The translations under genes and the position numbers were made by a program. Positions 2,399 through 41,800 of a DNA stretch of 64,000 nt are shown piece after piece; within the stretch, counting starts at the first letter, position 1; each line of letters opens with the position of its first letter. A model generated the notes under the pieces. That model saw nothing but the letters and a program-made list of their open reading frames with translations. It made no database searches and was not told where the DNA came from. Where the stretch lies: IMG/VR virus record IMGVR_UViG_3300047548_001236, positions 1 through 64,000 of that record. One strand, given 5' to 3'.

Positions 2399-2399
2399 C

Positions 2400-2687
2400 T
2401 CATTTCCCCTCTACGATCGCTTGAAGTTTCTTTTTGTATGCTTCGATTTTCGCAGCTCGGTCGGGCCAATGAATGCTTGGCTTATCAGCGTCGCGGCTGA
2501 GGTTATCCAACAGTGGAAGAATAGCTGCATGCAATTTATGCAGTCTATTTGTCAGATCTTCAATTTTCTGTTGGCTTGTTTGTTGCTCAGCTTCGAGTCT
2601 ATCTACCTCGACGCGTATCTGCGATGTGTCATCAGCAAAGCTGAATCCGAAATCGAAGTCTTCGATTCTATCAATATGTTTTACCAT
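2400..2687 (-). CDS. Hypothetical coiled-coil protein
   Basis: 95-aa ORF tightly packed between gp32 and uvsX. Confidence 0.7.
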   Translation of the reverse strand: MVKHIDRIEDFDFGFSFADDTSQIRVEVDRLEAEQQTSQQKIEDLTNRLHKLHAAILPLLDNLSRDADKPSIHWPDRAAKIEAYKKKLQAIVEGK

Positions 2688-2737
2688 GTTTGAATGTTTA
2701 TGGGTGGAGCACTATGTACCCCACCCATAATCCCTAC

Positions 2738-3706
2738 TTAGGTGCGAGCTGCCAGAGTCTTGAAGTATTCAAGGTCGTCATCGTCTTCACCGCTCGAAGT
2801 GATCGACGGACCTTCGTCCTCCTTGATCTTAGGAGCAGGAGCCGACTTCATTTGAGGCTTGCTCAGTTTGCTCATATCAATTTCGTCATCGACGTCGTCT
2901 TCAAAGGTCGTGGCAGGAGCCGACTGAGAAGCACCAGCATCGGACGATACACCGAGTACTCGATGCAGACGAGCCTGCAGTTCATCGTAAGGCTTGAAGT
3001 TGTGAGGAGCGATAACATCCTTCAACGGATGGCATTGCTTCCAAATAGCTTCCATACGGTCGTCGTCCTCGAACAGAGCGCCAGGCGAGTCGAATTCAGA
3101 CTTATCGTAGTTAGGATATCCGTCAACAACACGGATCTTGAGGCGGAAGTTTGCACCTTCCCACAGATCGAACGGATTGACCTTTTCCTCGTCTTCGAAC
3201 GAAGGGTTCATCAGCTCGTTCAACTTATCGTACACCTTCTTACCGTACTTGAACAAGAACACTTTACCCTCATTTTCAGGATTACCGGTGTCTTTGATCA
3301 CGTAGATGTTGGAAATGTAGTGCAGACGACGCTTCTGCTTGCGGACTTGCTTGCGCTGGGGCGATTCGTCGTCAGTTGTAGAGTTCCACAGCTTTGCGTT
3401 CAGCTCAGCAACGGGATCGGGCTCGTCCATGCTGATAGTTTTGCGAGAGTTCTCGATATACCATTGGCCAGTGGGACCTTGGAAAGCATGATCCCACAGA
3501 CGAACGAAGGGGAAATCTTCTCCATCAGGTTCAGGAAGGAATCGGATAATCGCGAAGGCGTTGCCAGCTTGATCTCGAGTGGGCTTCCAGTACTTGTCCG
3601 CTTCTGGATTGGTGTAGCCCTTATTGCCTATCTTTTGAAGCTGCTCGGTCAGCTTTTCAAAGGCTTTGTTGCGGTTCTTCTTAAGCGATGCGAAAGATGA
3701 TGTCAT
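2738..3706 (-). CDS. 32: Single-stranded DNA-binding protein gp32
   Basis: AIIRFLP, WYIENS, FKYGKK, NPFDLWEGANF motifs; acidic tail. Confidence 0.95.
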   Translation of the reverse strand: MTSSFASLKKNRNKAFEKLTEQLQKIGNKGYTNPEADKYWKPTRDQAGNAFAIIRFLPEPDGEDFPFVRLWDHAFQGPTGQWYIENSRKTISMDEPDPVAELNAKLWNSTTDDESPQRKQVRKQKRRLHYISNIYVIKDTGNPENEGKVFLFKYGKKVYDKLNELMNPSFEDEEKVNPFDLWEGANFRLKIRVVDGYPNYDKSEFDSPGALFEDDDRMEAIWKQCHPLKDVIAPHNFKPYDELQARLHRVLGVSSDAGASQSAPATTFEDDVDDEIDMSKLSKPQMKSAPAPKIKEDEGPSITSSGEDDDDLEYFKTLAART

Positions 3707-3768
3707 TATGTGTCTCCTTATGTATAGACGGTGTATGTTTCGATGTATGTTCGTTGTATTACCGACTT

Positions 3769-4395
3769 CTAATGTTCGGCTTCGTATTTATGCTGTCCCA
3801 CATAGGTTTTGAGCAATGTAGCAAACTTTTTTTTGTCCACCTTGATGAAGGGAAGATACTTCGTTGCTAGCTTGATTGCATCCTGTGCAACAACGTCATA
3901 CTCCAACTGTTGCTTCCAATATGGAAAAACATTGGTAATGTGAGTCAGGATCGTAAAGAACTCCAGTGATATCTGGTTTCTAAACAGCAACGTAATTACA
4001 TACGGATGTGATCCATTAGCCACGGTGAAGTTGTCTTCCAATGTGGGTTTGAGCTTGTTTAGCTCGCTCGTGAAATGGTGAGTCAAACCATCAATTTTTC
4101 TCTTCCATTCCACGTACACCTGTTCGGCTGACTCTTCGCAGAGATCGCGGACCCATATGTTCGGATCCTTGATCAGATTTGCGAGAATGAGGTCGTTCCA
4201 ATTCCTGTTCTTCGATAGCTTGAAAAAGAAGTATGCGTCGCTTCTTGTTTGGAACGAGTCGAACGATGCTTTCACCTTACCATGGTATTTGTGAAAATCA
4301 TACGATTCAGTGGTGAAGTGCCTTTTCAAAGCTAGATATTTCAGGTATACGTCAAACGACTCTTTAGTCGCAAAGTTGACGGGGAGCGTTGTCAT
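3769..4395 (-). CDS. 59: Helicase loader gp59
   Basis: YLKYLALKRHF...YDFHKYHGK N-terminus; 33-59-32 synteny. Confidence 0.9.
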   Translation of the reverse strand: MTTLPVNFATKESFDVYLKYLALKRHFTTESYDFHKYHGKVKASFDSFQTRSDAYFFFKLSKNRNWNDLILANLIKDPNIWVRDLCEESAEQVYVEWKRKIDGLTHHFTSELNKLKPTLEDNFTVANGSHPYVITLLFRNQISLEFFTILTHITNVFPYWKQQLEYDVVAQDAIKLATKYLPFIKVDKKKFATLLKTYVGQHKYEAEH

Positions 4396-8244: not shown

Positions 8245-9036
8245 ATGTCTATTTATACACCTTATACCTATCTTATAGGATGGTCTTCAATAAGTAAATA
8301 TTATTATGGCGTCCGTTTTGCGAAAAACTGCCACCCAAGTGATTTGTGGGTGAAGTACTTCACCTCTTCCAAAACCGTAGCTGAATACCGTAAACTTTAC
8401 GGTGAGCCTGACGTGATTGAGGTTCGAAAAACATTCACAGATAAACACTCGGCAATTTTGTGGGAGGAGAGAGTGCTCCGAAAACTAGATATCAAGCACA
8501 ACGAAAAGATGCTTAATGCGAACGTTGCAGGCGCAATCGTGAAGAATCTTGATCACGCAAAAGGAAGACCGAGTAAACTCAGAGGCAGATATTGGACGGA
8601 GGAACAGAAAGCGAAGCTCAGAAAACCAAAATCAGTCCCTAGTCCGTTAAAGGGAAAACAATTGACAGATGAACATAAAGAGAAGCTCCGTGCTGCTAAA
8701 CGCGACTATAAACCGTGGAACGCTGGCAAAACTGGCCTACAGAGTCATTCGAGCGAAACAAAAGAAAAAATGCGGATGGCTAAGATCAAGTCAAAAGTCA
8801 TTATATTTTCAGAATGCCCTTGCTGTAAGGAAATAAAAGTTAAGCCAAATCAAACTTTCTGTAGCAATTCGTGTAGAGCGAAACACAACGCACAAAAATT
8901 ATCAGCTCAGGGAAAATTTGGATTTCAGAACAAGTCTAACCAAGATGCTGCGCAGTTAGCTAGAAGGCCCGTTGGGTTATACGGTGGAGCCCATACCGCA
9001 GACTCAATCAAGCAGCTAGGCGAACCTGTGGCTTGA
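8245..9036 (+). CDS. Homing endonuclease, GIY-YIG-like with NUMOD3 repeats
   Basis: YTYLIGW...YYYGVR, HSSETKEKMR repeats; late promoter TATAAATA at 8174-8181; antisense to its neighbours. Confidence 0.8.
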   Translation: MSIYTPYTYLIGWSSISKYYYGVRFAKNCHPSDLWVKYFTSSKTVAEYRKLYGEPDVIEVRKTFTDKHSAILWEERVLRKLDIKHNEKMLNANVAGAIVKNLDHAKGRPSKLRGRYWTEEQKAKLRKPKSVPSPLKGKQLTDEHKEKLRAAKRDYKPWNAGKTGLQSHSSETKEKMRMAKIKSKVIIFSECPCCKEIKVKPNQTFCSNSCRAKHNAQKLSAQGKFGFQNKSNQDAAQLARRPVGLYGGAHTADSIKQLGEPVA

Positions 9037-9336
9037 AATTATCGTTTGCAATGTTTGTTGCAGTTATTATTGTCTTCGCGGTAACGGCGCTTAGATCCCG
9101 GTAGCTCCATCCTGCCTAGTCCGCCTGTCGATCCTATTTCGAGCCCATCAAAGATACACTTGCTGATATCCTGTTAGATTTCAACTTGACCCACTACAGA
9201 TCAAAGTATCTAACACCGCTTCCGTTATCAGTCCGGTAGGTAGTTAACCTGTTTCCTTTGGCAAGTGTATCTATGGTGGACCCGCTGGGTACCGCCCCCA
9301 GGTCCAGAACGTGTTCAGTGAATATCATCACTACAA
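8962..9336 (-). ncRNA. ssrA: Circularly permuted (two-piece) tmRNA
   Basis: Acceptor piece ends GGGGGCGGTACCCAGCGGGTCCACCA (9274); intervening segment 9147-9273; coding piece starts GGGCTCGAAATAGGATCGAC (9146); tag ANDNFKPQVRLAA* (9008-9049); G3.U70 pair. Confidence 0.93.
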
Positions 9337-9339
9337 TTG

Positions 9340-9370
9340 TATTTATACTAGATCATGCTGAACAAGTCAA
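9340..9370 (-). promoter_or_regulatory. Overlapping sigma70-type (TTGACT-17-TATAAA) and T4 late (TATAAATA) promoter for tmRNA
   Basis: TTGACTTGTTCAGCATGATCTAGTATAAATA. Confidence 0.75.
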
Positions 9371-9500
9371 CCGCGATCGTATCTTCTTTGCTTTTCTTCG
9401 TAGGTGTCGTATCTTTCGGTCTCGCTTCCCATCAACTCCTCCTATGAAAAGAGGGGCTAACCATTGGCCCCTCACGAGTCTATTACGCGACCAGACGTAT

Positions 9501-10390: not shown

Positions 10391-10861
10391 TTAAATAGTG
10401 TTGTGAGCGTAGTGGTCGCCAGCGAAGCTCGCAGCAAATGCTTGTGGCTTCATCTTGGGTTCTACGCCTGTGACACCAAGCACGTATCCTGCTGCTTGCG
10501 TAGCAACACAGTTAGAACCGTGTTTTGGGTCGGTGTTGACATCGCAGTGGATCTCAACATCAAATTCGTCAATGAACGGAGCGAGCTGAATATACAGTTC
10601 ACAAGACTTCATAACCTCATTCATGAGGCGCGTTGAAGGACGATTCTTCTTAACGTCGAAGTCGGGTTCGACAGAGCGGTGCTTGAAGACTCTACATCCT
10701 CTATTACCGTTCATGTGGACAACGCATACTGTTGCATATTTTGCGAACCAGCGACCATCCTTACGAAAACGAACGGAGTCTGTACCGATATAGACTTTTG
10801 TATCCTTGTTGAGCGAGTACAGTAAGTCGACCAACTCTTCTACTTGTGCTTGTGTGAACAT
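10391..10861 (-). CDS. RNase H-like YkuK family protein
   Basis: VYIGTDS, RLMNEV, EIHCDVN, AASFAGD. Confidence 0.8.
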   Translation of the reverse strand: MFTQAQVEELVDLLYSLNKDTKVYIGTDSVRFRKDGRWFAKYATVCVVHMNGNRGCRVFKHRSVEPDFDVKKNRPSTRLMNEVMKSCELYIQLAPFIDEFDVEIHCDVNTDPKHGSNCVATQAAGYVLGVTGVEPKMKPQAFAASFAGDHYAHNTI

Positions 10862-14121: not shown

Positions 14122-14265
14122 TACAGACGCGTTTTGTTGGTAACCTTATCTTGCAGATCACGGGCCCACTTCGGCTGAGGGAGATTCCACCCAACGACCA
14201 GACCAACGATACCACCGATAATGAATGCAAACATCTTTCTCATCCTTTCATGTTATAGAGATTTC

Positions 14266-14357
14266 TCAGGAACGCGTTTGCCACCATGGCGATCAGTCGA
14301 AGTTACTCGATTGACAGGAGTCGAACCTGCTATTTCGTGTTTGCTGAAACGTTCCTT
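14266..14357 (-). ncRNA. CAGCAA-stem cassette 1: permuted tRNA-elbow mimic (T arm, loop-closed acceptor, D arm)
   Basis: AGGAACG/CGTTCCT closing stem, TTCAGCAAA, GCAGGTTCGACTCCTGT. Confidence 0.7.
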
Positions 14358-14363
14358 TGTATG

Positions 14364-18569: not shown

Positions 18570-18674
18570 TGGTATCCCAGACAGGATTCGAACCTGCACC
18601 TACGTCGACTGATAACCAGCGGTAGGCCCTAGCTTTTTATGGCCCCGGTGTTTACCCACTTCCACCACTAGGAT
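18570..18674 (-). tRNA. Degenerate Leu-like tRNA with enlarged variable arm
   Basis: Acceptor, D and T arms and CCA intact; anticodon stem poorly paired. Confidence 0.5.
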
Positions 18675-18680
18675 ATTTTT

Positions 18681-18757
18681 TGGAGGTCGACCATGGACTT
18701 GAACCACGACCCCAGCTCTTGCAAGAGCTGTACATTAACCAATTTTGCTAATCGACC
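18681..18757 (-). tRNA. tRNA-Cys-like with 8-nt anticodon loop
   Basis: CAGCT-CTTGCAAG-AGCTG; U73; CCA. Confidence 0.7.
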
Positions 18758-19972: not shown

Positions 19973-20296
19973 TTATTTATATTTATCAACAATCGCGGCA
20001 GCTTTCTTCCGCCACTTTTTCAGCTCAATCACGCGCTCTTTGATGCTCGGATTGTTTTCGATGAATTTCAGAAGAGCCTCTTTTTTCGAGGTCCCGCGAC
20101 CATAGTTACCACCGTAAATGTAGTGAGCAATGCACCAATCGTTAGCGTTACCATTCAGACAGTAGGCGTGATATGCACCATAACGATCTCCGTTGATGCA
20201 GACGTTGCCGTGCTCGTCAAATCCCGCAACAGGGTAAAGTGCAGCGCGTTCAACAATTGCTTGAGCTTGACGCAGCGACGTGATCTTCGGAAGCAT
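19973..20296 (-). CDS. Hypothetical protein
   Basis: GAGG SD, 107 aa. Confidence 0.6.
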   Translation of the reverse strand: MLPKITSLRQAQAIVERAALYPVAGFDEHGNVCINGDRYGAYHAYCLNGNANDWCIAHYIYGGNYGRGTSKKEALLKFIENNPSIKERVIELKKWRKKAAAIVDKYK

Positions 20297-20405
20297 TCCA
20301 ATACCTCTTTCTGTATGAGGATAGGTATAGCTGATTTGGTGTTAGGCGACAACGGGCAGTTTCGCTTCATGCCCAGGAAGTTTTAGTAGGAGAATTAATC
20401 GCTGC

Positions 20406-20780
20406 TTATTGTTGATCGACCCATGCTTGAATATGCTTGAGGTCGATGTTCGGGTTGTCGTACTTTTTGACGAGTGCAAGAACTCTAGGGAGAATTTTGT
20501 TATAGAAGGTTGCTTCTTTACTCTCTTCTCTCTTAGCCTCTACGCTCTTATACGGCTTACCTGCAATGTAAGCTCTGGCGAGGAACGTCGATCGATTTTC
20601 GTTGCGCACATCCCATCTACGGTGTTCGTTCAACGAAAACCACTGGTTTGCCATACCGGCCCAGTCTTGTTCGTTCGTCTTTGCCCATTCGATCTGTCGC
20701 TTGAGCTTGTGCTCTTCGTGACGAATGATCTTTGCTTCCACGCTCAGGTGTTTGGACTTCACTTTAAGTTCGATGCTCAT
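20406..20780 (-). CDS. Conserved hypothetical phage protein
   Basis: ELKVKSKHL..EAKIIR.EE; LARAY..GKPY. Confidence 0.7.
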   Translation of the reverse strand: MSIELKVKSKHLSVEAKIIRHEEHKLKRQIEWAKTNEQDWAGMANQWFSLNEHRRWDVRNENRSTFLARAYIAGKPYKSVEAKREESKEATFYNKILPRVLALVKKYDNPNIDLKHIQAWVDQQ

Positions 20781-20838
20781 CTTAGCTTCCTTTTCTGATT
20801 TGAATTTGATTGGTAGTCTGGTTCAATTCAGAAGGTCG

Positions 20839-21108
20839 CTAAGGAGGTACCCAGTCTTCGATGATGGCATGGTTATCCTCATCGATCGTCAACCGACACT
20901 TTTTAACCTTGATCGCGCCTTTCGTGTGCGGGTTATCTGGCGTCTGCTTGGTTGTCCAAGGCTTGTTACATTCTACGCTATTGCAATAGAACGACTGTCC
21001 CTTGGCTTTGAGCACCCACATCGGAATGCTAGAGTCTTCGAGGTGTTTTTTGTTGAAGTGGAATACAATATCATCACACCTCATATCAACCTAGAAAGTC
21101 ATAGTTTT
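20839..21108 (-). CDS. Hypothetical protein
   Basis: ORF with AAGG SD. Confidence 0.55.
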
Positions 21109-21237
21109 ACCCTTTCGTTTGTTACGTTTGTCGGATATGTGAACGCTCTCCGTTCGCGTTTCAGTAACCTTCTCCACTTAGCCTTGGGCTCATCCAGCAG
21201 AGTCGGTTTAGGCTGTCACATTCAGCACTGAAATCTA

Positions 21238-21313
21238 TGGCGGCCCTGGTGGGACTCGAACCCACGACCATGAGTTTTAGAGGCTCTAGCTCTACCATCT
21301 GAGCTACAAGGCC
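21238..21313 (-). tRNA. Amber suppressor tRNA (anticodon CUA)
   Basis: Loop CT-CTA-AA, canonical D/T arms, G73, CCA; two mismatches in anticodon stem. Confidence 0.8.
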
Positions 21314-21694
21314 GTATGCTGGTTTTGAGGAGGATCCAGCAACCTCACTAATAGCAGAATCGCACGCATTGATTCCGAGTCGCCAGACATTGCGATGTGG
21401 CCATTGTAGTTATTACCTACAAATCATGGGCGATGAACACCCGCCATATATTCTGGTCGAACAAGACCTAAAAGCGAGCCTCTAGGCTGGTTGGGCTTTG
21501 ACATAATTTCACCACGTTTGAAAGCAGGGTGGCTTGTGGCTACTTTAGTGTCATACCAACCAAACGCTGATTTTATCATTCTTGGTTGCAGTATCCACCC
21601 AAATTCTTCGACCTTTCACCGGTTAAGGTCGACTGTTGCTTTCACGGGCTCCCCTGAGCGGACAGGGTAAAGCAAGCAATCAGATTCTTAAAAA

Positions 21695-21806
21695 CAGATT
21701 GAGATTTCTACTTCTTTGATAGACCAGGAAATCGAAGACTGGGGTGACCGGTGAGCCGGAGCTCTGGTGGTCGTGCTATGTTTCTTAGTTGCGGAACACT
21801 CAATCT
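21695..21806 (-). ncRNA. CCGCAA-stem cassette 2 (non-tRNA cargo)
   Basis: AGATTGAG/CTCAATCT stem plus TGTTCCGCAA. Confidence 0.55.
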
Positions 21807-21842
21807 TGAATACGTTATACTATACTCTTTAGTGAGAAACAA

Positions 21843-22020
21843 CAGGATCATTTTACGTGCTCTACTAACTGAGCTACTCTCCCATCAAAGATACACCGTT
21901 TTTACAGATTTCCCTCTTTCGAGTAACGCACCTCTGTCGATGTATCTGTGGTGGGAGAGGGTGGATTTGCACCACCGACCACGGCTTTATCGGAGCAAAA
22001 AGATTGCTGAATTGATCCTT
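21843..22020 (-). tRNA. Circularly permuted tRNA-Ile(GAU) in CAGCAA cassette 3
   Basis: 3' half 21949-21996 transcribed before 5' half 21856-21883; rejoins to 76 nt with CGGCT/AGCCG stem and loop CCGATAA. Confidence 0.85.
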
Positions 22021-22031
22021 TTGAAATTATT

Positions 22032-22157
22032 TCAGGTTCGCCTTTTACGTTGACCTAACTACTTAGTCGATCACCCCGTAGTGAAGTTGGCGGGGTGAGC
22101 AGGACTTGCACCTGCATCTACGGCTTGACATGCATAATTGTATGCTGAACCGAACCT
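22032..22157 (-). tRNA. Circularly permuted tRNA-Asp(GUC) in cassette 4
   Basis: 3' half 22088-22133, 5' half 22048-22077; stem ACGGC/GCCGT, loop ATGTCAA, G73. Confidence 0.85.
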
Positions 22158-22164
22158 TTTAATC

Positions 22165-22238
22165 TGGTGCTCCAGCGCGGTAACGATCCGCGGTCTCACC
22201 CGTACCAAGGGCGTGTAATACCTTTATACTACAGGAGC
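22165..22238 (-). tRNA. tRNA-Thr(GGU)
   Basis: Loop TTGGTAC; variant T loop. Confidence 0.85.
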
Positions 22239-22391
22239 AAAAACACTCACTTCAAACGAAGCAACCACTTAACAAACTTGGTCATCGCCATCTCGTTGTT
22301 CGGCTGAGGCGGAAGATGCCCTGCCTTCGGAGTGTCGATGTAACGCTGGATTGGGTTGGTCATATTCACTTCTCCATCATGTTGTTGAAAG

Positions 22392-22479
22392 TGGTACCCC
22401 CTGCCGGACTCGAACCGGCACGCCCTTCCGGACAGTAGATTTTAAGTCTACGGCGTCTGACCTGTTTCGCCAAGGGGGC
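22392..22479 (-). tRNA. tRNA-Leu(UAA)
   Basis: Class II cloverleaf. Confidence 0.92.
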
Positions 22480-22484
22480 ATATC

Positions 22485-22561
22485 TGGTAGTCCCTGTAGG
22501 ACTCGAACCTACAACCGACCCGTTATGAGCGGGGGGCTCTAACCAATTGAGCTAAGGGACC
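22485..22561 (-). tRNA. tRNA(CAU), Ile2 or Met
   Basis: Loop CTCATAA. Confidence 0.9.
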
Positions 22562-22568
22562 ATTATCT

Positions 22569-23030
22569 CTATTTATTGCAAAGCTCACGAGGCAGCAGGT
22601 CGAATTCAGGAAGATAATCGTTGAAATAACGACGGTAGCTTCCGACGACTGACTTGATCTTACCCTTGACCTTGCGACGCTCTTCAACGTTGCGAATACT
22701 GTTCATCAGGTTGCCGAGCAGATGACGAACCGAAGCAATGTGAGCCTGTTTGTACAGCCTCTCTGCTTCAACCTTGGAGTAACCACGTTCGACAACATAA
22801 TTGACGAAGCAACGATTACCACGTTCTTCATTGCACTTCCGGCACATCACGAACATGTTGTCCGTAGTATCTGGACCACCGTACGACTTTGCTACCATGT
22901 GGTCAACAGTCGCCATGTTGCGTTGCACTTTATCAGGATTTGCTTTCCAGACCAACTGAACGTTGCAGCAAGGGCAACGACGAAGTCCGCTTTCGAAAGC
23001 ATTCTGCAGGGCTGTTTTCTTGAAGCACAT
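22569..23030 (-). CDS. HNH endonuclease
   Basis: CPCC...ATVDHMVAKSYGG...NMFVMCRKCNEERG. Confidence 0.85.
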   Translation of the reverse strand: MCFKKTALQNAFESGLRRCPCCNVQLVWKANPDKVQRNMATVDHMVAKSYGGPDTTDNMFVMCRKCNEERGNRCFVNYVVERGYSKVEAERLYKQAHIASVRHLLGNLMNSIRNVEERRKVKGKIKSVVGSYRRYFNDYLPEFDLLPRELCNK

Positions 23031-23087
23031 TTGAGTTTTTCCTCTCTTGTGCCGTCTATATAGGGGAAGTTGGTTGTACAGGCAACA

Positions 23088-23399
23088 TCAATAATTGTGA
23101 AAAAGATCGTATGTCTTCTCAAAAATATCTGGCTTGCAAGGATAATGCTCACCATTGACACCTCGAATAATATAATCGCCAGGAAGCGCGTTCATCGTAC
23201 CTTCCAGAGTAATTATTTTGAAGATTTTACCGTCGTTCTTCACGTGATCCTGATACTGTTCGAAGGAGTTGAACCACTTGAACCAATCAGGATGCTTACC
23301 CGTGAAGTCGAGTACTTCTCTAAGGTTGTCTCCTGTGTATTGTATCGCTTCGATCACAACAGGTCTTTTAATGTATTTGTTGATCATCACGTTCTCCAT
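23088..23399 (-). CDS. Conserved phage protein (PGDYI-type)
   Basis: KRPVVIEAIQY...TLEG.M...GDYIIRG..GE.YPCKPDIF..TY. Confidence 0.8.
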   Translation of the reverse strand: MENVMINKYIKRPVVIEAIQYTGDNLREVLDFTGKHPDWFKWFNSFEQYQDHVKNDGKIFKIITLEGTMNALPGDYIIRGVNGEHYPCKPDIFEKTYDLFHNY

Positions 23400-24355
23400 T
23401 CTACTTGCAACGGGGAGTACGAGGGGATTTGCACCAGGCCCCTGAACCTTCTCCTCTTTTCAGCTCCTCAGGGAAGGAGCCTACTTCTGCACCTTGCTTA
23501 CTCCGCTCTGGAAGTAGAATATTGTTGCGGGTGAGATTACCCCGTATTGTGAGCGCCTTTCCGATGTACCACATCCCTTGCGAGGAGTGTTGTCGGGTTA
23601 TCCACAAGAGTCTTTCGATCATCTTGTATCGCTCAGTGCTGCCGTTTTTGAGGTCTGGCTGTTGACCTGTCGCATGTTACTACTCGTCCGTCTTTCCTAC
23701 GCCTGCCTTGCGAGCAGCTCAGAGGCGCTAACCTCCTACGTGATCATTCTGAACAACTACTCTAGCCTTGCGAGCCTTCGTAGGCCTGATTATCTTTCGA
23801 CTCAGGCATTAAGCACCTTTCGTAACACACCGGAGCAGACTTTCGCTTTTTGAATCTATGTTGCTTTGAACCAAAATCAAACGCTAATTTAATAGCTGCG
23901 AACCTACTGAGAAGTGCTGCTCCAGTTGCTCCACACCTTGTTAGATGCAGAATACCACACTCCTCCTGTCTTTCTCCTTGCGGGATACTCAACGTCACTT
24001 CACGAATCCGGTGTGACCCTTCCTCGTTGATGATCCTACACCGCCCTTCTACGCGAATAGTCGGACTATGTAGACACCTGTTGGACTTTTCCATTCGTTA
24101 GTTTGGCTGAAAACTGTTTGGGCGCCAACCCTCTTACACCTCACCGATCGGCTCTGGTGCTATCCTTTCGGACAGTCTTCCTAACTTACTGGATACCTCC
24201 TAGCTTCTAAGGCTAGAAGGGACTTGCTTTCGGTTTAATCCGAGTCAAGTCTATCCCAGGCTTGTATGAATGGACCATTTTACTGGCGCAGGTATGTAGG
24301 AATCCCTGCTTTGGGTGTGTTACCACACTTACCCTGACGACGTCATACCGCCATT
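23400..24355 (-). ncRNA. Candidate large structured ncRNA (about 950 nt)
   Basis: No credible ORF, many hairpins, downstream of a promoter and boxA within the tRNA island. Confidence 0.45.
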
Positions 24356-24578: not shown

Positions 24579-24644
24579 GTGAAGACTTTCATCTTCGGTA
24601 GAGATCTGTATAAACTATTCTTTCCAGACAGTCAACAGATTTTA

Positions 24645-24768
24645 ACGGGAACATCTGATTTTTGCCGGCTGCTCTACCACTGAGCTACAAGATCCTTGTG
24701 GGGACCTTGGAGGGATTCGAACCCACGACCCGCTGGTTGGTATATCAATATTTGCTGTATTGTTCCCT
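24645..24768 (-). ncRNA. CAGCAA cassette 5: permuted tRNA-like RNA with G-1:C73-type acceptor
   Basis: T arm, CAAGGTCCCCA-CAA-GGATCTTG, then D arm; GGGAACA/TGTTCCC closing stem. Confidence 0.75.
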
Positions 24769-24938
24769 AATTGGGATTCAAGATGGGAGTCTTTTCCTCC
24801 CTGCCAGCCTGGCATTCGCTTCAATGGGGCTCTCGGTGAGTCACTCCCCTCCACGGGATGGAACAAATTCCATCGCAGCCACCGTCTACAAGCATCTAAC
24901 TACAGGCGTGTCAGTGTAGACGTTCCAACACCCTTAAT

Positions 24939-25404: not shown

Positions 25405-25674
25405 TTAGCTGATATGCTTGGACGAGTCAACAACTTTTTTCAGATATTCATAAACTTCATCATAATCGTCAAACATCCTCGTTCCATGCTTGCTCATCAC
25501 TCGGACTTTTGACCCGAAACACTGAACCAGACCAAAACCTGGATATCTTCCGTTACCGAGACGTCTAGCATTCCAGCGTGTTCTTCTCGGCACTGGTTCT
25601 ACAAAAGCATAATCGACGTTGAGGATTTCTCCGCAGGTTTCGTAGAACTTCTTCTTTTCTTCGTTTGTTTTCAT
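25405..25674 (-). CDS. Hypothetical protein
   Basis: ORF overlapping upstream stop (ATGA). Confidence 0.6.
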   Translation of the reverse strand: MKTNEEKKKFYETCGEILNVDYAFVEPVPRRTRWNARRLGNGRYPGFGLVQCFGSKVRVMSKHGTRMFDDYDEVYEYLKKVVDSSKHIS

Positions 25675-26072
25675 GGATTGTAAGGGATTGCCAGCCTTTC
25701 GTCTAACATCAGTTGGTTGATATTCACACCATCGACGTACAGCACAGCAAGATAACGTCCATACTTGTCGGGCTCATCCTTGATCGATTCAATCACGATC
25801 GTACGACCCTGAGAGATTTTAGCGCGAAGCCAATCTCGAACAGCAAGACCTCTTTCCCTTGTGGCTCCTCTAACTTCTGGAGCGTCAAGACCATACAACC
25901 TAAGACTCTTGTCTTTGATCCAGATGGAAAATCCGAGGTCGATGTCTACTGTTAGCGTGTCGCCGTCGTATACGGAAACAACCTCTACCTCGTAGATATA
26001 GTTTCGAGTGGCTTGTTGTGCATGAGCAGATGTTGCAAACAACAACGCACATATGGAAAGTATTTTGATCAT
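25671..26072 (-). CDS. Thermonuclease (SNase-like) with signal peptide
   Basis: VYDGDT, LRLYGLDAPE, DKYGRYLA. Confidence 0.9.
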   Translation of the reverse strand: MIKILSICALLFATSAHAQQATRNYIYEVEVVSVYDGDTLTVDIDLGFSIWIKDKSLRLYGLDAPEVRGATRERGLAVRDWLRAKISQGRTIVIESIKDEPDKYGRYLAVLYVDGVNINQLMLDERLAIPYNP

Positions 26073-27947: not shown

Positions 27948-28078
27948 GTGTATTCTCCGTATGTTTTGTATATGTGCGTATATTTTTGTATGAACAATGT
28001 GTAGGCACGATGTAGTAATGCGTTCACAACACTATTTATACACGGTTACGCATACGATACAGCACCTACGAAGAAAAA

Positions 28079-28177
28079 TATCCTGGTTGGACTCGAACCA
28101 ACGGCCTGCGCTTTATTCCCAGCGTTTGGGTCCTTCACCATGAGGGAGCACTGCTCTACCGACTGAGCTACAGGATG
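28079..28177 (-). ncRNA. tRNA-like RNA with 34-nt anticodon loop, no CCA
   Basis: Canonical D and T arms; two hairpins in the anticodon loop. Confidence 0.6.
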
Positions 28178-28190
28178 TTTCGGAATTCGT

Positions 28191-29227: not shown

Positions 29228-29236
29228 ATAATTTAT

Positions 29237-29321
29237 TCAGGATCAATGTTTGTGGAATCGAACCACTTCGACAAGTTTTTCAAGACTCGTTTTATCCGAA
29301 GATGTTGCGGAACTGATCCTT
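29237..29321 (-). ncRNA. CCGCAA cassette 7 carrying anticodon-like arm and T arm
   Basis: AGGATCA/TGATCCT; CGAGTCTTGAAAAACTTG; GTGGTTCGATTCCAC. Confidence 0.7.
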
Positions 29322-29713
29322 TATTTGTCTTTACATACTATCAAACAGTTCCTCATGGAAGTCAATAATTAATTTGCCCAGCCGCTTCCTGGGCGATGTA
29401 CCTACTTTGACCTTACGTCCTAGACCGGTACCCGGTGCTCGCGCGGACCCAAGCCACTAGTGCTCTCCATATTTATAGACCCATGGGCTGATGATGGGTC
29501 TTTCTTACATAGGTTGAGTCTGATATGCATTTTAAGATCCCCGCTTATACTCTGCTCGGATCACGTTTGAAGTTAGACTTCAACTCGTCTTAGACGGACC
29601 ATCCCGTTGCTTTCAGAGGTTAAACCACCTATGTGAGTCATGTCCCGGGTCCCCGTACGGTGAACCTATTACCCCCTCGAGGCAAGCCTCACTACAGGAC
29701 GGGCATTTCATAC

Positions 29714-29830: not shown

Positions 29831-29852
29831 TTTCATTATCCTTTGTTTTGTT

Positions 29853-29981
29853 TCTGGATCATCTTTGATGCGTCGTTGCGTTTACCATTCCGCCACACGA
29901 ACATTGGCTCGTGGTAGGACTCGAACCTACAATTGCTTGTGCAATACGATTTTACAATGCAGAGTTGCTGTACTGATCCAT
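29853..29981 (-). ncRNA. CAGCAA cassette 8: permuted class-II tRNA-like RNA (Tyr-GUA or Leu-like)
   Basis: TTGTAAA loop, variable arm, T arm, CCA in loop, then D arm GGCGGAATGGTAAACGC. Confidence 0.72.
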
Positions 29982-29989
29982 TAATTGAA

Positions 29990-33472: not shown

Positions 33473-34010
33473 GCTAATTCGAATGACTGGCCCCACCTAT
33501 CTCGCCGTCAAACCGATCCTACCATTTTACCCTGGATTTACCCAGTCAAAAATAGGACCCTCCGTGATTCCGTTGGGAGGAGCAACCCTCCCGGAGTAAC
33601 AATCGAAGTGATGAGCTTCTACAAATTCGGTGTGTTACCAACCTAGCCATTTCCCAGTATAGCCTACTGCCCAACGCCTTCACGATCGGTTGGCAATCGA
33701 ATCCTGATAACCCGCAGATTCCTAGGGTATTGCAAGGGATGTTCATCACACATCCACAGGCCATATTCTTTATGCCGCTTCGAGTTTCCATTGAATTTGC
33801 AGTAACACTTCTTGCAGCCTATGATACTCGACCCGAGCATCAAGCCGTTCTGCAGCAGTGTAATCGGGATTTCTCGTTTCTTCGTGCTTGATAGACATTT
33901 GACGAGAGATCTCAACCCACTGCTTGATTAAACTATCGCGGTCCACGTCGAACTCCTAATCTTGTAAGCAGGACATACGTCCTTTTCGATTCGCAGTCAA
34001 CGTGTTTTTG

Positions 34011-34070
34011 CGGGATCATCTTGCTTTTCAACCAAAATGAAAGTTTGTATTTGTTGCGGAACTGATCCCT
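34011..34070 (-). ncRNA. CCGCAA cassette 9 displaying only an anticodon stem-loop
   Basis: GGGATCA/TGATCCC; TTTCA-TTTTGGT-TGAAA. Confidence 0.7.
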
Positions 34071-34074
34071 TTAT

Positions 34075-35623: not shown

Positions 35624-35632
35624 ATATATTTT

Positions 35633-35770
35633 TCTGGATCAACTTTTTGCTGTATACTGTGCTGCTATTACACTAATCCGCCATAGTTAGATTTGGTGGC
35701 GGACCTAGGATTTGCACCTAGACTAGTCGTTTATGATACGAAAAGCTAATTTGTTGCTGGAATGATCCAT
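35633..35770 (-). tRNA. Circularly permuted tRNA-Met(CAU) in cassette 10
   Basis: 3' half 35694-35740, 5' half 35656-35682; stem GT|CGT/ACGAC, loop ATCATAA. Confidence 0.85.
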
Positions 35771-35777
35771 TATTGAT

Positions 35778-38291: not shown

Positions 38292-38298
38292 ATATTCT

Positions 38299-38429
38299 CT
38301 GGATCAACTTTTTGCTACGCGTTCTATCTACTAAACTAACCCCTGTCAGTAATATGGTCAGGGGTGTAGGATTTGCACCTACGTCTCGATCTCCCAAAGA
38401 TATGCTAATTAGTTGCTGTAATGATCCAT
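38299..38429 (-). tRNA. Circularly permuted tRNA-Pro(UGG) in cassette 11
   Basis: 3' half 38355-38401, 5' half 38318-38345; stem CG|ATC/GATCG, loop TTTGGGA, C1-G72, A73. Confidence 0.87.
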
Positions 38430-38436
38430 CAGAATG

Positions 38437-39068: not shown

Positions 39069-39422
39069 TGGTGGACTGTATCGGATTTGAACCGACATTG
39101 TAAGGTTATCTGACACCAGATGGTCGTTACCGACATGGATTTACACAGGCCCCACGGTTACCGTTGTTTACTAGTCAACAGCCCATTGGTGCCTAAGTCG
39201 TACATGCTAAAGTCAGCAAGACGAACATAGGACTTTATCTTGGTGGATCTGACGGGACTCGAACCCGCGTAACTCTGCCTTGTGTACCCCTAACGAATTA
39301 AGGTGGCAGTGTGATTCCTCACGTACACTAACAGACCCATAATTTGGTGGAACAGGGAAGTCGTGTAGTCGCTCCCAGGCGGCCCATATTGGCCCCGCAG
39401 TTATACACTCTGCGCATGCCCC
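39069..39422 (-). ncRNA. Three tRNA-like RNAs with G3.U70 Ala-type acceptors and aberrant bodies
   Basis: 39069-39184, 39241-39338, 39345-39422; each GGG.../...TCC-A-CCA. Confidence 0.65.
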
Positions 39423-41674: not shown

Positions 41675-41800
41675 TGGCGACCCCGGTAGGACTCGAACCT
41701 ACAACCTACTGATTAGATCGTGCCTTAGAAGATTCGCACTTCACTGGGCTTCCATACCCTCAGGCCAAGTCAGTTGCTCTATCCATTGAGCTACGGAGTC
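41675..41800 (-). tRNA. tRNA-Arg(UCU) interrupted by a 50-nt insert in the anticodon
   Basis: Removing 41717-41766 restores a 76-nt cloverleaf with loop CTTCTAA. Confidence 0.85.

What the first reader, a model, noticed from the sequence alone, without database searches (positions are those of the whole stretch)
21884..21948. Permuted tRNA-Ile and permuted tmRNA share the same intervening-sequence ends
Seen: the tmRNA reads CCA-TAGATACAC...GTGTATCTTTGAT-GGG (9273 to 9147) and the permuted tRNA-Ile reads CCA-CAGATACAT...GTGTATCTTTGAT-GGG. Both spacers close with an AGATACA/TGTATCT helix and share the TTGAT leader before position 1. Inference: the permuted tRNA uses, or derives from, the two-piece tmRNA processing route. 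This suggests a mechanism for maturation and origin.
Basis: seen in the sequence. Interest (0 to 1): 0.85.

Follow-up and report, generated by a model that had tools for sequence, protein, structure and literature searches.

The report
tmRNA-type spacer inside phage Y-RNA-like tRNA mimic
The shared spacer ends are real, but the "permuted tRNA-Ile" is better read as a Y-RNA-like tRNA mimic whose acceptor loop carries the spacer that T4-like phages use in their two-piece tmRNAs, so both RNAs are probably cut open in the same way.

Summary
The 16-mer GTGTATCTTTGATGGG occurs exactly twice in the window, at the 3' ends of the two spacers (0.04 expected by chance). Both spacers start CCA-N-AGATACA.

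It is part of a wider rule. In 99 unbiased phage two-piece tmRNA spacers, a covarying helix starts 1 nt after CCA and ends 5 nt before G1 in 94, followed by a near-invariant leader WUGAU. AGATACA/TGTATCT is only the commonest helix variant.

The "permuted tRNA-Ile" (21839-22023, minus strand) belongs to a large phage RNA family with YrlA/Y-RNA architecture:
- a covarying terminal stem;
- a conserved CAGCAA motif;
- a T arm, acceptor hairpin and D arm in permuted order.

The window holds at least six full copies. Relatives lie directly upstream of a Ro60-like protein gene in 40 of 80 phage loci. In seven members, including this one, the acceptor loop is replaced by NCCA plus a tmRNA-type spacer. 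In one related phage the spacer interiors of the tmRNA and the Y-like RNA are homologous.

The most likely mechanism is RNase P cleavage at G1 plus 3' trimming to CCA, giving a two-piece RNA, as shown for M. smegmatis YrlA. This step is inferred, not shown.

Decoding as tRNA-Ile is unlikely: C33, G55, a split anticodon stem, and relatives with closed acceptor stems all argue against it. I class it as a new variant of a known kind.

The parts
21839..22023 (-).
   Evidence: Covariance model R1 scores 76.2 bits, E 2e-15, full length. MFE -65.7 kcal/mol, z -5.8.
22013..22019 (-). Terminal (outer) stem, 5' strand AGGATCA; pairs with 21844-21850
   Evidence: Helix 1 is paired in 98.5% of cells over 48 distinct sequences, and 6 of 7 pairs show double changes.
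22004..22009 (-). Conserved single-stranded CAGCAA motif directly after the outer stem (family signature; candidate protein-binding site)
   Evidence: Present in nearly all 49 aligned members while the stem sequence covaries.
21982..21996 (-). Anticodon-like hairpin GCT-CCGATAA-AGC plus CG (nt 42-43), which pairs with C27 G28 of the downstream piece. The loop has GAU, A37 and A38 but C33.
   Evidence: A split anticodon arm is found in 13 of 49 members.
21960..21976 (-). T arm GGTGG-TGCAAAT-CCACC (G at position 55)
   Evidence: Among the tRNA-like RNAs of the window, TGCAA T loops are seen only in Y-like copies, never in the 38 ordinary tRNAs.
21949..21959 (-). Acceptor 3' strand CTCTCCC, discriminator A73, encoded CCA
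21884..21948 (-). 65-nt intervening sequence: N77 (C), helix AGATACATCG (21947-21938) / CGGTGTATCT (21898-21889), leader TTGAT (21888-21884)
   Evidence: The helix has 10 bp in the 1 nt / 5 nt register.
21844..21883 (-). Downstream piece: acceptor 5' strand GGGAGAG (G1 = 21883), D arm GCTC-AGTTAGTA-GAGC, A26, C27 G28, TAAAA, outer stem 3' strand TGATCCT
8962..9374 (-). Two-piece (permuted) tmRNA gene: T arm and acceptor 3' strand with CCA at 9276-9274, G1 at 9146, tag ORF at 9049-9008 (ANDNFKPQVRLAA*)
   Evidence: Rfam tmRNA_permuted 90.4 bits (threshold 47) and alpha_tmRNA 74 bits (threshold 50). Tag translated.
9147..9273 (-). 127-nt tmRNA intervening sequence: N77 (T), helix AGATACACTTGC (9272-9261) / GCAAGTGTATCT (9163-9152), leader TTGAT (9151-9147)
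22029..22161 (-). Yrl-1: tandem Y-RNA-like tRNA mimic directly upstream of Yrl-2. Outer stem AGGTTCG/CGAACCT. The acceptor stem is followed by GCCA and a 10-nt linker.
   Evidence: R1 82 bits.
24642..24771 (-). Further Y-RNA-like copy (outer stem GGGAACA/TGTTCCC; CCCA plus a 4-nt linker)
   Evidence: R1 95.9 bits. Rfam YrlA scores 35.8 bits on its core, E 2e-6, below the threshold of 69.
38295..38432 (-). Further Y-RNA-like copy, Pro-like (anticodon loop UGG, C1-G72, ACCA plus a 9-nt linker)
   Evidence: R1 64.5 bits.
35630..35773 (-). Further Y-RNA-like copy, Met-like (CAU loop, ACCA plus an 11-nt linker)
   Evidence: R1 59.2 bits.
29850..29984 (-). Further Y-RNA-like copy (Leu-like D arm, closed acceptor hairpin)
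   Evidence: R1 53.2 bits.

Best explanation
The 65-nt spacer at 21884-21948 is an intervening sequence of the type that T4-like (roseophage-type) phages use in their circularly permuted, two-piece tmRNA genes. Here it sits in the acceptor loop of a Y-RNA-like tRNA mimic (YrlA architecture).

That mimic has a terminal stem formed by its 5' and 3' ends, a conserved CAGCAA motif, an Ile-like anticodon hairpin, a T arm, an acceptor stem and a D arm, in permuted order.

Both precursors fold into one long rod. The NCCA end is partly paired with the leader UGAU, and the spacer helix stacks on that.

The inferred maturation has three steps:
1. RNase P recognises the 12-bp stack of T arm and acceptor stem and cuts 5' of G1.
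2. The spacer, now a 3' trailer, is removed by a nick at N77 and/or by exonucleases, back to the encoded CCA.
3. The two pieces stay together through the acceptor stem, two base pairs of the split anticodon stem, the terminal stem and D/T-loop contacts, just as the two tmRNA pieces do.

The product would be a two-piece Y-like RNA with a free tRNA-type CCA end. It probably serves a phage Ro60-like protein (gene not found in this window) and/or proteins that recognise tRNA, rather than decoding Ile codons.

What is shown: the sequence identity of the ends, the family-wide spacer architecture with covariation, membership in the RNA family, and the synteny of that family with a Ro60-like gene. What is inferred: every cleavage step, the two-piece state, the function and the protein partner.
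For: 1. Motif specificity: there are two exact copies only, with 0.04 expected.

2. Spacer rule. In an unbiased sample of 99 unique phage permuted-tmRNA spacers, 94 have a helix of at least 6 bp in the register 1 nt after CCA and 5 nt before G1. The mean is 10.2 contiguous bp, against 3.7 for shuffled partners. Compensatory changes are frequent (pair 2 AU 59 / GC 36; pair 4 UA 47 / CG 39; pair 7 AU 67 / UA 23). The leader is U-4 in 98, G-3 in 96, A-2 in 89 and U-1 in 96 of 99. The cultured roseophage DSS3_MAL1, whose ssrA is annotated, has the same layout with a different helix, AUGCUCAC/GUGAGCAU.

3. The Y-like elements with long spacers obey the same rule with helices of different sequence: window Yrl-2, L137a, L137b, L533, L204 and L671 have 6-12 bp in the same register, and the divergent L106 element has the same ends. 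Where the discriminator is G (L204) the leader ends in C, so N73 and N-1 covary.

4. Family. Model R1 finds 49 members at E < 1e-7. Of their cells 94.2% are paired against 61.5% in shuffles, 25 of 28 pairs have double changes, and the covariation score is 0.77 against at most 0.135 for slid partners. Rfam YrlA hits relatives at E 2e-6, below its threshold.

5. Twenty of 49 members encode N73-CCA directly after the acceptor 3' strand, against a chance of 1 in 64 per sequence.

6. Precedent: M. smegmatis YrlA, which has a 7-bp acceptor stem, is cut by RNase P in vivo and in vitro and gains CCA, and both halves stay bound to Rsr (PMC4201824).

7. Ro60 link. All 85 R1 hits in 80 loci centred on a DUF2828/DUF7788 gene lie on the gene's strand, and 40 loci have a hit ending within 400 nt upstream of the gene. 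The AlphaFold model of that protein (pLDDT 88) has TROVE/Ro60 structures as its five best PDB matches, E 4e-10 to 4e-7.

8. Origin. The tmRNA and Y-like spacer interiors are homologous in contig IMGVR_UViG_3300042375_000763 (z 5.9). All three contigs that could be checked and that carry a spacer-bearing Y-like RNA also carry a permuted tmRNA.
Against: - No RNA ends have been mapped. RNase P cleavage and CCA exposure are inferred only.
- The near-invariant UGAU leader and the sequence-conserved base of the helix are more than RNase P is known to need, so another sequence-specific factor may act.
- The Ro60-binding motif GNCGAAN0-1G (CGAA) of known YrlA RNAs is absent.
- Rfam YrlA does not hit Yrl-2 and stays below its threshold on relatives.
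- No Ro60-like gene lies in the window (tblastn), and the rest of the roughly 283-kb genome could not be read.
- In this window the two spacer interiors are unrelated (z 0.5). The shared AGATACA helix could in part be coincidence of the commonest variant, which about a quarter of phage tmRNA spacers carry.
- Anticodon-like loops with U33 and a purine at 37 in 10 of 13 split-arm members leave room for real tRNA function.
Confidence: 0.68

Rival explanations
1. It is a true permuted (two-piece or religated) tRNA-Ile gene. After spacer removal the product is charged with isoleucine and decodes AUY codons. The terminal stem serves only to hold the halves together or to process them, perhaps with nick sealing by the phage RNA ligase.
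For: - All the tRNA parts are present: a 7-bp acceptor stem, A73, an encoded CCA, a D arm, a composite 5-bp anticodon stem, a 7-nt loop with GAU-A37-A38, and a variable loop and T stem resembling tRNA-Ile.
- No standard tRNA-Ile(GAU) lies in the window.
- Thirteen of 49 relatives have split anticodon arms, with U33 in 10 and a purine at 37 in all 13, and with varied anticodons. Ten of these 13 have NCCA, against 10 of the other 36.
- GAA is conserved across three diverged Phe-like orthologues.
- Unpermuted copies resemble resident tRNAs of the same anticodon, Pro and Met.
- An Rnl2-type RNA ligase is encoded at 59683-60894.
Against: - This copy has C33 instead of the universal U33, and G55 instead of U55.
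- The anticodon stem is interrupted between nt 28 and 29 by a three-way junction.
- The same acceptor stem GGGAGAG/CUCUCCC-A73 goes with different 'anticodons' (GAU, GAA, UAG) or with none.
- Close relatives with anticodon-like loops have closed acceptor hairpins and cannot be charged (L376).
- The terminal stem plus CAGCAA is conserved even in copies that lack a tRNA domain, and it is syntenic with a Ro60-like gene.
- Two window copies duplicate anticodons already served by ordinary tRNAs.
- ARAGORN and the Rfam tRNA model do not call it.
Confidence: 0.12
2. The spacer is removed by a dedicated sequence- or structure-specific endonuclease, phage-encoded or host RNase III-like, that recognises the conserved rod (NCCA/UGAU with a C-A mismatch, plus the RRRYAYWY helix). 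RNase P with generic trimming would not be the route. The Y-like RNA would have borrowed that recognition module from the tmRNA.
For: - The leader UGAU and the first 8 bp of the helix are conserved in sequence well beyond ordinary tRNA leaders.
- The spacing is fixed at 1 nt and 5 nt.
- N73 and N-1 covary, which indicates that the paired rod forms.
- The rod is about 22-24 bp long.
- The motif is essentially phage-specific: at least 71 viral loci, against three tmRNA loci (on two MAG contigs) in 185,579 species' genomes.
Against: - No nuclease gene co-occurs with phage tmRNA loci; only gp32 and one neighbouring ORF recur.
- RNase III leaves 2-nt overhangs, which do not fit a 4-nt ACCA end.
- RNase P processing of two-piece tmRNA and of YrlA has published support (PMC11915505, PMC4201824).
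- Y-like members with short linkers and NCCA lack the helix yet keep the tRNA-like RNase P determinants.
Confidence: 0.15
3. The shared ends mark a small mobile or recombining DNA cassette with 8-bp inverted termini that inserted independently into the tmRNA gene and the tRNA-like gene. They would not be an RNA processing signal.
For: - The ends are inverted repeats.
- The interiors are hypervariable.
- Spacer interiors are shared between a tmRNA and a Y-like RNA in one genome, and between Y-like RNAs of different body type, L204 and L137a, z 18.
Against: - The position is always exactly between A76+1 and G1-5.
- The helix is kept by compensatory changes with many different sequences.
- The leader pairs with NCCA and covaries with the discriminator.
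- There are no target-site duplications, no ORF, and no other copies in the window.
- DNA-level exchange may explain how the spacer spread, but not why its architecture is conserved.
Confidence: 0.05

Closest known systems
YrlA / bacterial and phage Y RNA-like RNAs (Rfam RF02553; Chen et al. 2014, PMC4201824; Thermus phage phiLo Yrl1/Yrl2, PMC12135203)
   Same: - A terminal stem formed by the 5' and 3' ends, with an internal loop holding a conserved motif.
- A permuted tRNA-like module: T arm, acceptor hairpin, D arm.
- Several copies per genome, placed next to tRNAs and directly upstream of a Ro60-type gene.
- M. smegmatis YrlA is cut by RNase P at the acceptor stem and carries CCA, giving two halves.
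   Different: - The conserved motif is CAGCAA, not GNCGAAN0-1G / CGAA.
- The Rfam score is below threshold.
- The partner gene is a DUF2828/DUF7788 protein that resembles Ro60 only by fold.
- Here the CCA is encoded and is followed by a 65-nt spacer of tmRNA type.
- Many members carry a split but otherwise canonical anticodon arm, with bodies resembling particular tRNA species.
Two-piece (circularly permuted) tmRNA of Alphaproteobacteria and their phages (Rfam RF01849, RF04321; PMC11915505)
   Same: - Gene order: acceptor 3' half with CCA, then the intervening sequence, then G1 and the 5' half.
- The pieces are held together by base pairing.
- Processing is by tRNA-maturing enzymes.
- The window's own tmRNA has the same spacer ends.
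   Different: - The Y-like element has a true D arm and no G3:U70.
- It has no tag ORF and no pseudoknots.
- It has a different terminal stem.
- The Rfam consensus for bacterial alpha tmRNA shows uuuuau before G1 rather than the phage UGAU, and shows no conserved helix. This was not surveyed in bacterial genomes here.
Circularly permuted tRNA genes of Cyanidioschyzon merolae and some archaea (Soma 2014, PMC3978253)
   Same: The 3' half precedes the 5' half, a spacer lies between CCA and position 1, and RNase P-type end maturation opens the acceptor end.
   Different: - Those genes are matured through a bulge-helix-bulge motif, the splicing endonuclease, a ligase and a circular intermediate, and give a continuous decoding tRNA.
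- Here there is no BHB motif.
- The break lies in the anticodon stem at 28/29, with a conserved protein-binding-type stem.
- The host is a bacteriophage, which lacks that endonuclease.

Membership tests
Two-piece (permuted) tmRNA (window 8962-9374) | Score above the Rfam curated threshold for a permuted tmRNA model | tested here: met
   RF04321 scores 90.4 bits (threshold 47) and RF01849 scores 74 bits (threshold 50).
Two-piece (permuted) tmRNA (window 8962-9374) | G3:U70 and A73-CCA acceptor end, and a tag ORF that resumes at GCA and ends ...LAA-stop | tested here: met
   The acceptor is GGGCUCG/CGGGUCC-ACCA. The tag is ANDNFKPQVRLAA*.
Phage-type tmRNA intervening sequence (defined here) | CCA, one nucleotide, a helix of at least 6 bp, WUGAU, G1 | tested here: met
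   The rule holds in 94 of 99 unbiased phage tmRNA spacers. The window tmRNA has 12 bp and Yrl-2 has 10 bp in the same register.
YrlA / Y RNA-like | Terminal 5'/3' stem plus permuted tRNA-like module (T arm, acceptor hairpin, D arm) | tested here: met
   Yrl-2 scores 76.2 bits with R1. On 48 distinct sequences 94.2% of cells pair, and 25 of 28 pairs show double changes.
YrlA / Y RNA-like | Rfam RF02553 gathering score (69 bits) | tested here: not met
   Yrl-2 gets no hit at E up to 10. Relatives score 36.7 bits (L144) and 35.8 bits (window 24668-24733), E about 2e-6.
YrlA / Y RNA-like | Ro60-binding motif GNCGAAN0-1G (CGAA) in the terminal stem or loop | tested here: not met
   The 5' strand reads GGAUCAAUUCAGCAA. 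The stem sequence covaries, and the conserved motif is CAGCAA.
YrlA / Y RNA-like | Encoded next to a Ro60 (TROVE plus vWA) gene | tested here: inconclusive
   For the family the feature is met: 40 of 80 loci have a hit within 400 nt upstream of a gene for a Ro60-fold protein, and all 85 hits lie on the gene's strand. No such gene lies in this window.
YrlA / Y RNA-like | Physical binding to Ro60/Rsr | not testable with these tools
   This needs co-immunoprecipitation or a gel-shift assay.
Elongator tRNA-Ile(GAU) | Detected as a tRNA by ARAGORN or Rfam; continuous cloverleaf | tested here: not met
   There is no call at 21839-22023. ARAGORN calls it only after artificial rejoining, and then with shifting anticodons. 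The anticodon stem is split at 28/29.
Elongator tRNA-Ile(GAU) | Universal U33 and T-loop U54-U55-C56 | tested here: not met
   The anticodon loop is CCGAUAA (C33) and the T loop is UGCAAAU (G55). All 38 ordinary tRNAs of the window have TTC T loops.
Elongator tRNA-Ile(GAU) | Aminoacylation by IleRS and use on the ribosome | not testable with these tools
   This needs charging assays.
Permuted tRNA genes of the eukaryotic/archaeal type | Bulge-helix-bulge motif at the junction of the precursor ends | tested here: not met
   The ends form a plain 7-bp stem followed by a large internal loop. This was judged by inspection only.

The most novel reading that the evidence does not exclude
The NCCA-bearing members of this phage family, including the Ile-like copy at 21839-22023, are matured into two-piece tRNA-like molecules that keep the identity of a particular tRNA species (Ile, Phe, Pro, Met, Asn and others). 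These molecules are actually aminoacylated. They would then act either as the first permuted or split tRNAs known outside archaea and eukaryotes, or as charged Y RNAs that link a Ro60-like protein to the translation or tRNA-surveillance machinery, for example as decoys for host anticodon nucleases.
Probability: 0.2. Interest if true: 0.9.

Novelty: new variant of a known kind. Interest (0 to 1): 0.68.

Why it matters
Three things follow if this holds.

1. Phage two-piece tmRNAs would have a precise, conserved and so far undescribed processing module: CCA-N-helix-WUGAU-G1, with the leader pairing to NCCA. That makes the maturation of permuted tmRNA directly testable, including in cultured roseophages such as DSS3_MAL1.

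2. The same module has been transplanted into a different class of tRNA-like RNA. This is a natural experiment showing that the module is portable and sufficient to open an acceptor hairpin.

3. T4-like phages carry multi-copy sets of Y-RNA-like tRNA mimics in their tRNA arrays. Many have an encoded CCA and anticodon arms resembling particular tRNA species, and the family is linked to a Ro60-fold protein now filed as DUF2828/DUF7788. This widens the Ro60/Y-RNA system in phages and raises the question whether Y RNAs can be charged or act as tRNA decoys in phage-host conflict.

It also warns annotators: 'permuted tRNA' calls in phage tRNA arrays may be Y-like RNAs.

Tried and rejected
- Megablast of 20000-24000 against cultured phages gave no match. 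Distant blastn of the Y-like pair also gave none.
- The single metagenome scan (GGATCAATTCAGCAAN{10,30}GGTC) returned 120 rows, none with a tRNA-like continuation.
- The exact 15-mer scan GGATCAATTCAGCAA in viral contigs returned mostly chance hits; only L060, L137, L144 and L172 were real.
- A profile search of the PDB by sequence with the DUF2828 protein found nothing. Only the fold comparison showed Ro60.
- tblastn of the Ro60-like protein against the window found nothing significant; the best hit was E 1.5, in a vWA protein.
- A search for a nuclease gene co-occurring with phage tmRNA loci found none.
- Small self-cleaving ribozyme: I compared the spacer ends with the hammerhead core by eye and rejected it (no CUGANGA/GAAA core; the interior is hypervariable in length and sequence). 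Other ribozyme classes were not compared in detail.
- RNase III as the enzyme that makes the final ends: rejected because its 2-nt overhang does not fit a 4-nt ACCA end.
- ARAGORN on artificially rejoined halves is too permissive. It gave Ile, Ser, Lys and undetermined calls depending on the join, so I did not use it as evidence.
- ARAGORN's tmRNA mode misses the permuted tmRNA.
- The review PMC10870794 is not held.
Full report
1. THE OBSERVATION

On the minus strand the window carries a permuted tmRNA. Rfam tmRNA_permuted scores 90.4 bits and alpha_tmRNA 74 bits. Its tag is ANDNFKPQVRLAA.

The acceptor 3' half ends in CCA at 9276-9274. A 127-nt spacer (9273-9147) follows, then G1 at 9146.

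At 21951-21949 a second tRNA-like 3' half ends in ACCA. A 65-nt spacer follows at 21948-21884, exactly the reported coordinates, and then GGGAGAG-TA-GCTC....

Both spacers begin N-AGATACA and end GTGTATCT-TTGAT before GGG. The 16-mer GTGTATCTTTGATGGG matches only these two places, both exactly, even when 2 mismatches are allowed. The expectation is 0.04, and no shuffle out of 100 reached 2 matches.

RNAfold gives both precursors the same rod (z -5.8 and -4.1):
- a 7-bp acceptor stem;
- A73:U-1;
- a C74/A-2 mismatch;
- C75:G-3 and A76:U-4;
- an N77/U-5 mismatch;
- a 10-12-bp spacer helix.

The spacer interiors are unrelated (z 0.5).

2. THE SPACER ENDS ARE A FAMILY-WIDE SIGNATURE OF PHAGE TWO-PIECE tmRNAs

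In 71 of them an upstream CCA-N-AGATA-type match accompanies the 16-mer, and nearly all of these are spacers of permuted tmRNAs. Their tmRNA bodies and spacer interiors differ widely, yet nearly all also start CCA-N-AGATACA.

To remove the bias of that query I sampled phage tmRNAs by their body only, with the pattern TCCACCA-N90-120-AAATAGGATCGAC. This gave 99 unique spacers:
- In 94 of 99, a helix of at least 6 bp starts exactly 1 nt after CCA and ends exactly 5 nt before G1. The mean is 10.2 contiguous bp, against 3.7 when 5' and 3' ends of different spacers are combined.
- Compensatory changes are abundant: pair 2 AU 59 / GC 36; pair 4 UA 47 / CG 39; pair 7 AU 67 / UA 23; pair 8 CG 52 / UA 23 / UG 17.
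- The leader W-U-G-A-U is almost invariant: U-4 in 98, G-3 in 96, A-2 in 89 and U-1 in 96 of 99.

AGATACA/TGTATCT is only the commonest helix variant, found in about a quarter of the spacers.

The cultured roseophage DSS3_MAL1, whose ssrA is annotated, shows the same layout with the helix AUGCUCAC/GUGAGCAU.

In one genome for each of 185,579 prokaryotic species, the exact motif in a tmRNA context occurs at only three loci, on two MAG contigs that may themselves be phage DNA.

Ordinary tRNAs of this window have AT-rich leaders, and only 2 of 38 have TGAT. So UGAU is not a general feature of tRNA leaders in this phage.

3. WHAT THE 'PERMUTED tRNA-Ile' IS

Its outer ends, AAAGGATCAATTCAGCAA ... 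AAAATGATCCTG, recur in other phage contigs. There the same body has an acceptor stem simply closed by a 4-17-nt loop, with no CCA and no spacer (L144, L375, L376, L379, among others).

L144 hits Rfam YrlA (Y RNA-like) at 36.7 bits, E 2e-6, below the threshold of 69. The best window copy scores 35.8 bits.

A covariance model built from six closed forms (R1) finds six full copies in the window, all on the minus strand inside the tRNA array:
- 24642-24771 (95.9 bits);
- 22029-22161, Yrl-1, in tandem with the finding (82 bits);
- 21839-22023, Yrl-2, the finding (76.2 bits);
- 38295-38432 (64.5 bits);
- 35630-35773 (59.2 bits);
- 29850-29984 (53.2 bits).

It also finds three reduced or weaker copies.

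Forty-nine members at E < 1e-7 were aligned (A5). On that alignment 94.2% of cells pair, against 61.5% in shuffles. Twenty-five of 28 pairs show changes on both sides. The covariation score is 0.77, against at most 0.135 with slid partners. The alignment is fitted to the model, which favours the structure somewhat.

The family signature has three parts:
- a 6-7-bp terminal stem whose sequence covaries (GGAUCA/UGAUCC, GGGAAC/GUUCCC, GGUUCG/CGAACC, GGACUA/UAGUCC and others);
- a conserved single-stranded CAGCAA directly after that stem;
- an A-rich 3' strand.

This is the YrlA architecture. However, the published Ro60-binding motif GNCGAAN0-1G (PMC4201824), also described as CGAA (PMC12135203), is not present.

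4. LINK TO A Ro60-LIKE PROTEIN

In L375, L377 and L106 a protein of about 471 aa with DUF2828 and DUF7788 domains is encoded just downstream of such RNAs. At least 574 viral loci encode relatives of it.

I ran R1 over the best 80 of these loci. All 85 hits at E < 1e-3 lie on the gene's strand, and 40 loci have a hit ending within 400 nt upstream of the start codon.

An AlphaFold model of the protein (34 sequences, pLDDT 88, pTM 0.88) has TROVE/Ro60 structures as its five best PDB matches:
- 9kop;
- 1yvr, the Ro autoantigen;
- 9l5y, Ro60 of Thermus phage phiLo;
- 9nen;
- 9nfa.

These match at E 4e-10 to 4e-7 and TM 0.5-0.63.

The family therefore behaves like Y RNAs of a divergent phage Ro60. 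No such gene lies in this window.

5. OPEN ACCEPTOR ENDS IN THE FAMILY

Twenty of 49 members encode N73-CCA immediately after the acceptor 3' strand, where chance would give 1 in 64 per sequence. In most of them a 3-11-nt linker follows before position 1.

Six members have long spacers of 54-104 nt that obey the tmRNA rule, with 6-12 bp in the 1 nt / 5 nt register and a UGAU leader. They are window Yrl-2, L137a, L137b, L533, L204 and L671. L106 is a divergent seventh.

Their helices differ in sequence: AGAUACAUCG, AGAUGUAUUG, GGAUACUG, GGGUACACUA and GACUC. In L204 the discriminator is G and the leader ends in C, so N73 and N-1 covary and the paired rod is probably real.

All three contigs that could be checked (the window's, L533/L429 and L204/L418) also encode a permuted tmRNA with this spacer type.

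In L533/L429 the spacer interiors of the tmRNA and the Y-like RNA are homologous (z 5.9; 0 of 300 shuffles). The L204 and L137a spacers are homologous to each other although the RNA bodies are of different subtypes (z 18).

The spacer has therefore moved between tmRNA and Y-like genes, and among Y-like genes. In the window itself only the functional ends are still alike.

6. IS IT A tRNA-Ile?

Points for:
- The upstream piece has a hairpin GCU-CCGAUAA-AGC followed by CG. That CG pairs with C27 G28 of the downstream piece, giving a composite 5-bp anticodon stem with a GAU loop.
- The variable loop and T stem resemble tRNA-Ile.
- No standard tRNA-Ile lies in the window.
- Thirteen of 49 members have such split anticodon arms. 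U33 is present in 10 and a purine at position 37 in all 13. The anticodons are varied: CUU, GAU, GAA three times, GUU, UGG twice, UAG, UAC, CAU and CCA twice.
- Ten of these 13 also have NCCA, against 10 of the other 36 members.
- Rejoined window copies resemble resident tRNAs of the same type: the UGG copy has C1-G72 and A73 like tRNA-Pro, the CAU copy resembles tRNA-Met, and one copy has a Leu-type D arm.

Points against:
- This copy has C33 and a UGCAAAU T loop (G55). No ordinary tRNA of the window has such a T loop.
- The stem is broken by a three-way junction.
- The same acceptor stem GGGAGAG/CUCUCCC-A73 goes with GAU, GAA, UAG or with no anticodon arm at all.
- The closed-acceptor relative L376 has a perfect CUU loop but no acceptor end.
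- The terminal stem with CAGCAA is conserved even in copies that have no tRNA domain.

I conclude that it is an Ile-like tRNA mimic on a Y-RNA scaffold. Decoding is not excluded, and I give it about 0.1.

7. MECHANISM

Shown:
- the sequence identity of the spacer ends;
- the structure rule and its covariation;
- membership in the RNA family;
- the synteny of the family with a Ro60-like gene.

Inferred:
- RNase P cuts 5' of G1. The precedents are the statement that permuted tmRNA transcripts are cleaved by tRNA-processing enzymes (PMC11915505) and the RNase P cleavage and CCA tailing of M. smegmatis YrlA, which has a 7-bp acceptor stem (PMC4201824).
- The spacer then becomes a 3' trailer and is removed back to CCA.
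- The two pieces stay paired.

The strong conservation of UGAU and of the base of the helix is more than RNase P is known to require. A dedicated factor, or an RNase III-type first cut, therefore remains a serious rival (0.15). No nuclease gene co-occurs with the tmRNA loci.

8. COMPARISON AND NOVELTY

Already known:
- phage Y RNA-like RNAs and phage Ro60 (PMC4201824, PMC12135203);
- a two-piece, CCA-tailed YrlA;
- permuted tmRNAs.

As far as the searched literature shows, these appear to be new:
- the precise spacer architecture of phage two-piece tmRNAs;
- its presence inside Y-like RNAs;
- the CAGCAA-type family with a DUF2828 Ro60-fold partner;
- the frequent encoded CCA and the anticodon arms resembling particular tRNA species.

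Verdict: a real feature, a new variant of a known kind.

Noticed in passing
window 23528-23965 (-): A full-length GOLLD RNA (Rfam RF02032, 194.9 bits against a threshold of 150) lies inside the tRNA array, 1.5 kb from the finding.
   Followed up: no
window 24642-24771, 22029-22161, 38295-38432, 35630-35773, 29850-29984 (-); reduced or weaker copies at 14263-14360, 34007-34073, 29234-29324 (-): Copies of the Y-RNA-like family (terminal stem plus CAGCAA) are scattered through the tRNA array. There are five full copies besides the finding and three reduced or weaker ones. Four of the five full copies encode N73-CCA after the acceptor stem. The reduced copies lack part or all of the tRNA-like domain.
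   Followed up: partly
window 21238-21313 (-) and 18681-18757 (-): There is a suppressor-type tRNA with anticodon CUA, which ARAGORN calls 'Pyl'. There is also a tRNA with an 8-nt anticodon loop, read as the four-base anticodon UGCA.
   Followed up: no
window 41675-41800, 39241-39338, 28077-28178, 18570-18674 (-): These tRNA genes carry insertions: ARAGORN places inserts of 50, 18, 4 and 5 nt in or next to the anticodon loop, and the genes are 98-126 nt long. Most are seen only by Rfam or by ARAGORN's intron mode. The nature of the inserts is unknown.
   Followed up: no
window 9200-9211 (-), inside the tmRNA spacer: The 12-mer AGATACTTTGAT joins the 5'-end motif (AGATAC) directly to the 3'-end motif (TTTGAT), like an 'empty' spacer junction. 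It could be a remnant of a nested or duplicated spacer, or it could be chance.
   Followed up: no
window 59683-60894 (-): A 403-aa protein has an RNA ligase domain (PF09414, E 2e-25). It could matter for any nick-sealing of split tRNA-like RNAs.
   Followed up: no
window 1331-3706, 49486-52664 (-): T4-like core genes are present: UvsX/RecA-like, gp32, and topoisomerase II large and medium subunits. gp32 homologues lie near the tmRNA in 57 of 179 phage tmRNA loci. The phage is a large T4-like virus, and its nearest cultured tmRNA relatives are roseophages (DSS3_MAL1, MD18).
   Followed up: partly
window 22569-23030 (-), 25671-26072 (-), 10391-10861 (-): An HNH endonuclease, a staphylococcal-nuclease-like protein and an RNase H-like (PF04308) protein are encoded between the tRNA and ncRNA genes. 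None co-occurs with phage tmRNA loci elsewhere.
   Followed up: partly
L085 and L116 (viral contigs), tmRNA spacers: Some phage tmRNA spacers contain T-arm-like segments (GGTTCGATTCC) in their interior. This may mean nested tRNA-like pieces.
   Followed up: no
L595-L674 (viral contigs), gene at about 2501-3900: The Pfam families DUF2828 and DUF7788 together form a Ro60-like (TROVE plus vWA, DVSGSM MIDAS motif) protein. It is found in at least 574 viral contigs and is nearly always preceded by Y-like RNAs. Sequence search of the PDB misses the relationship; fold search finds it.
   Followed up: yes
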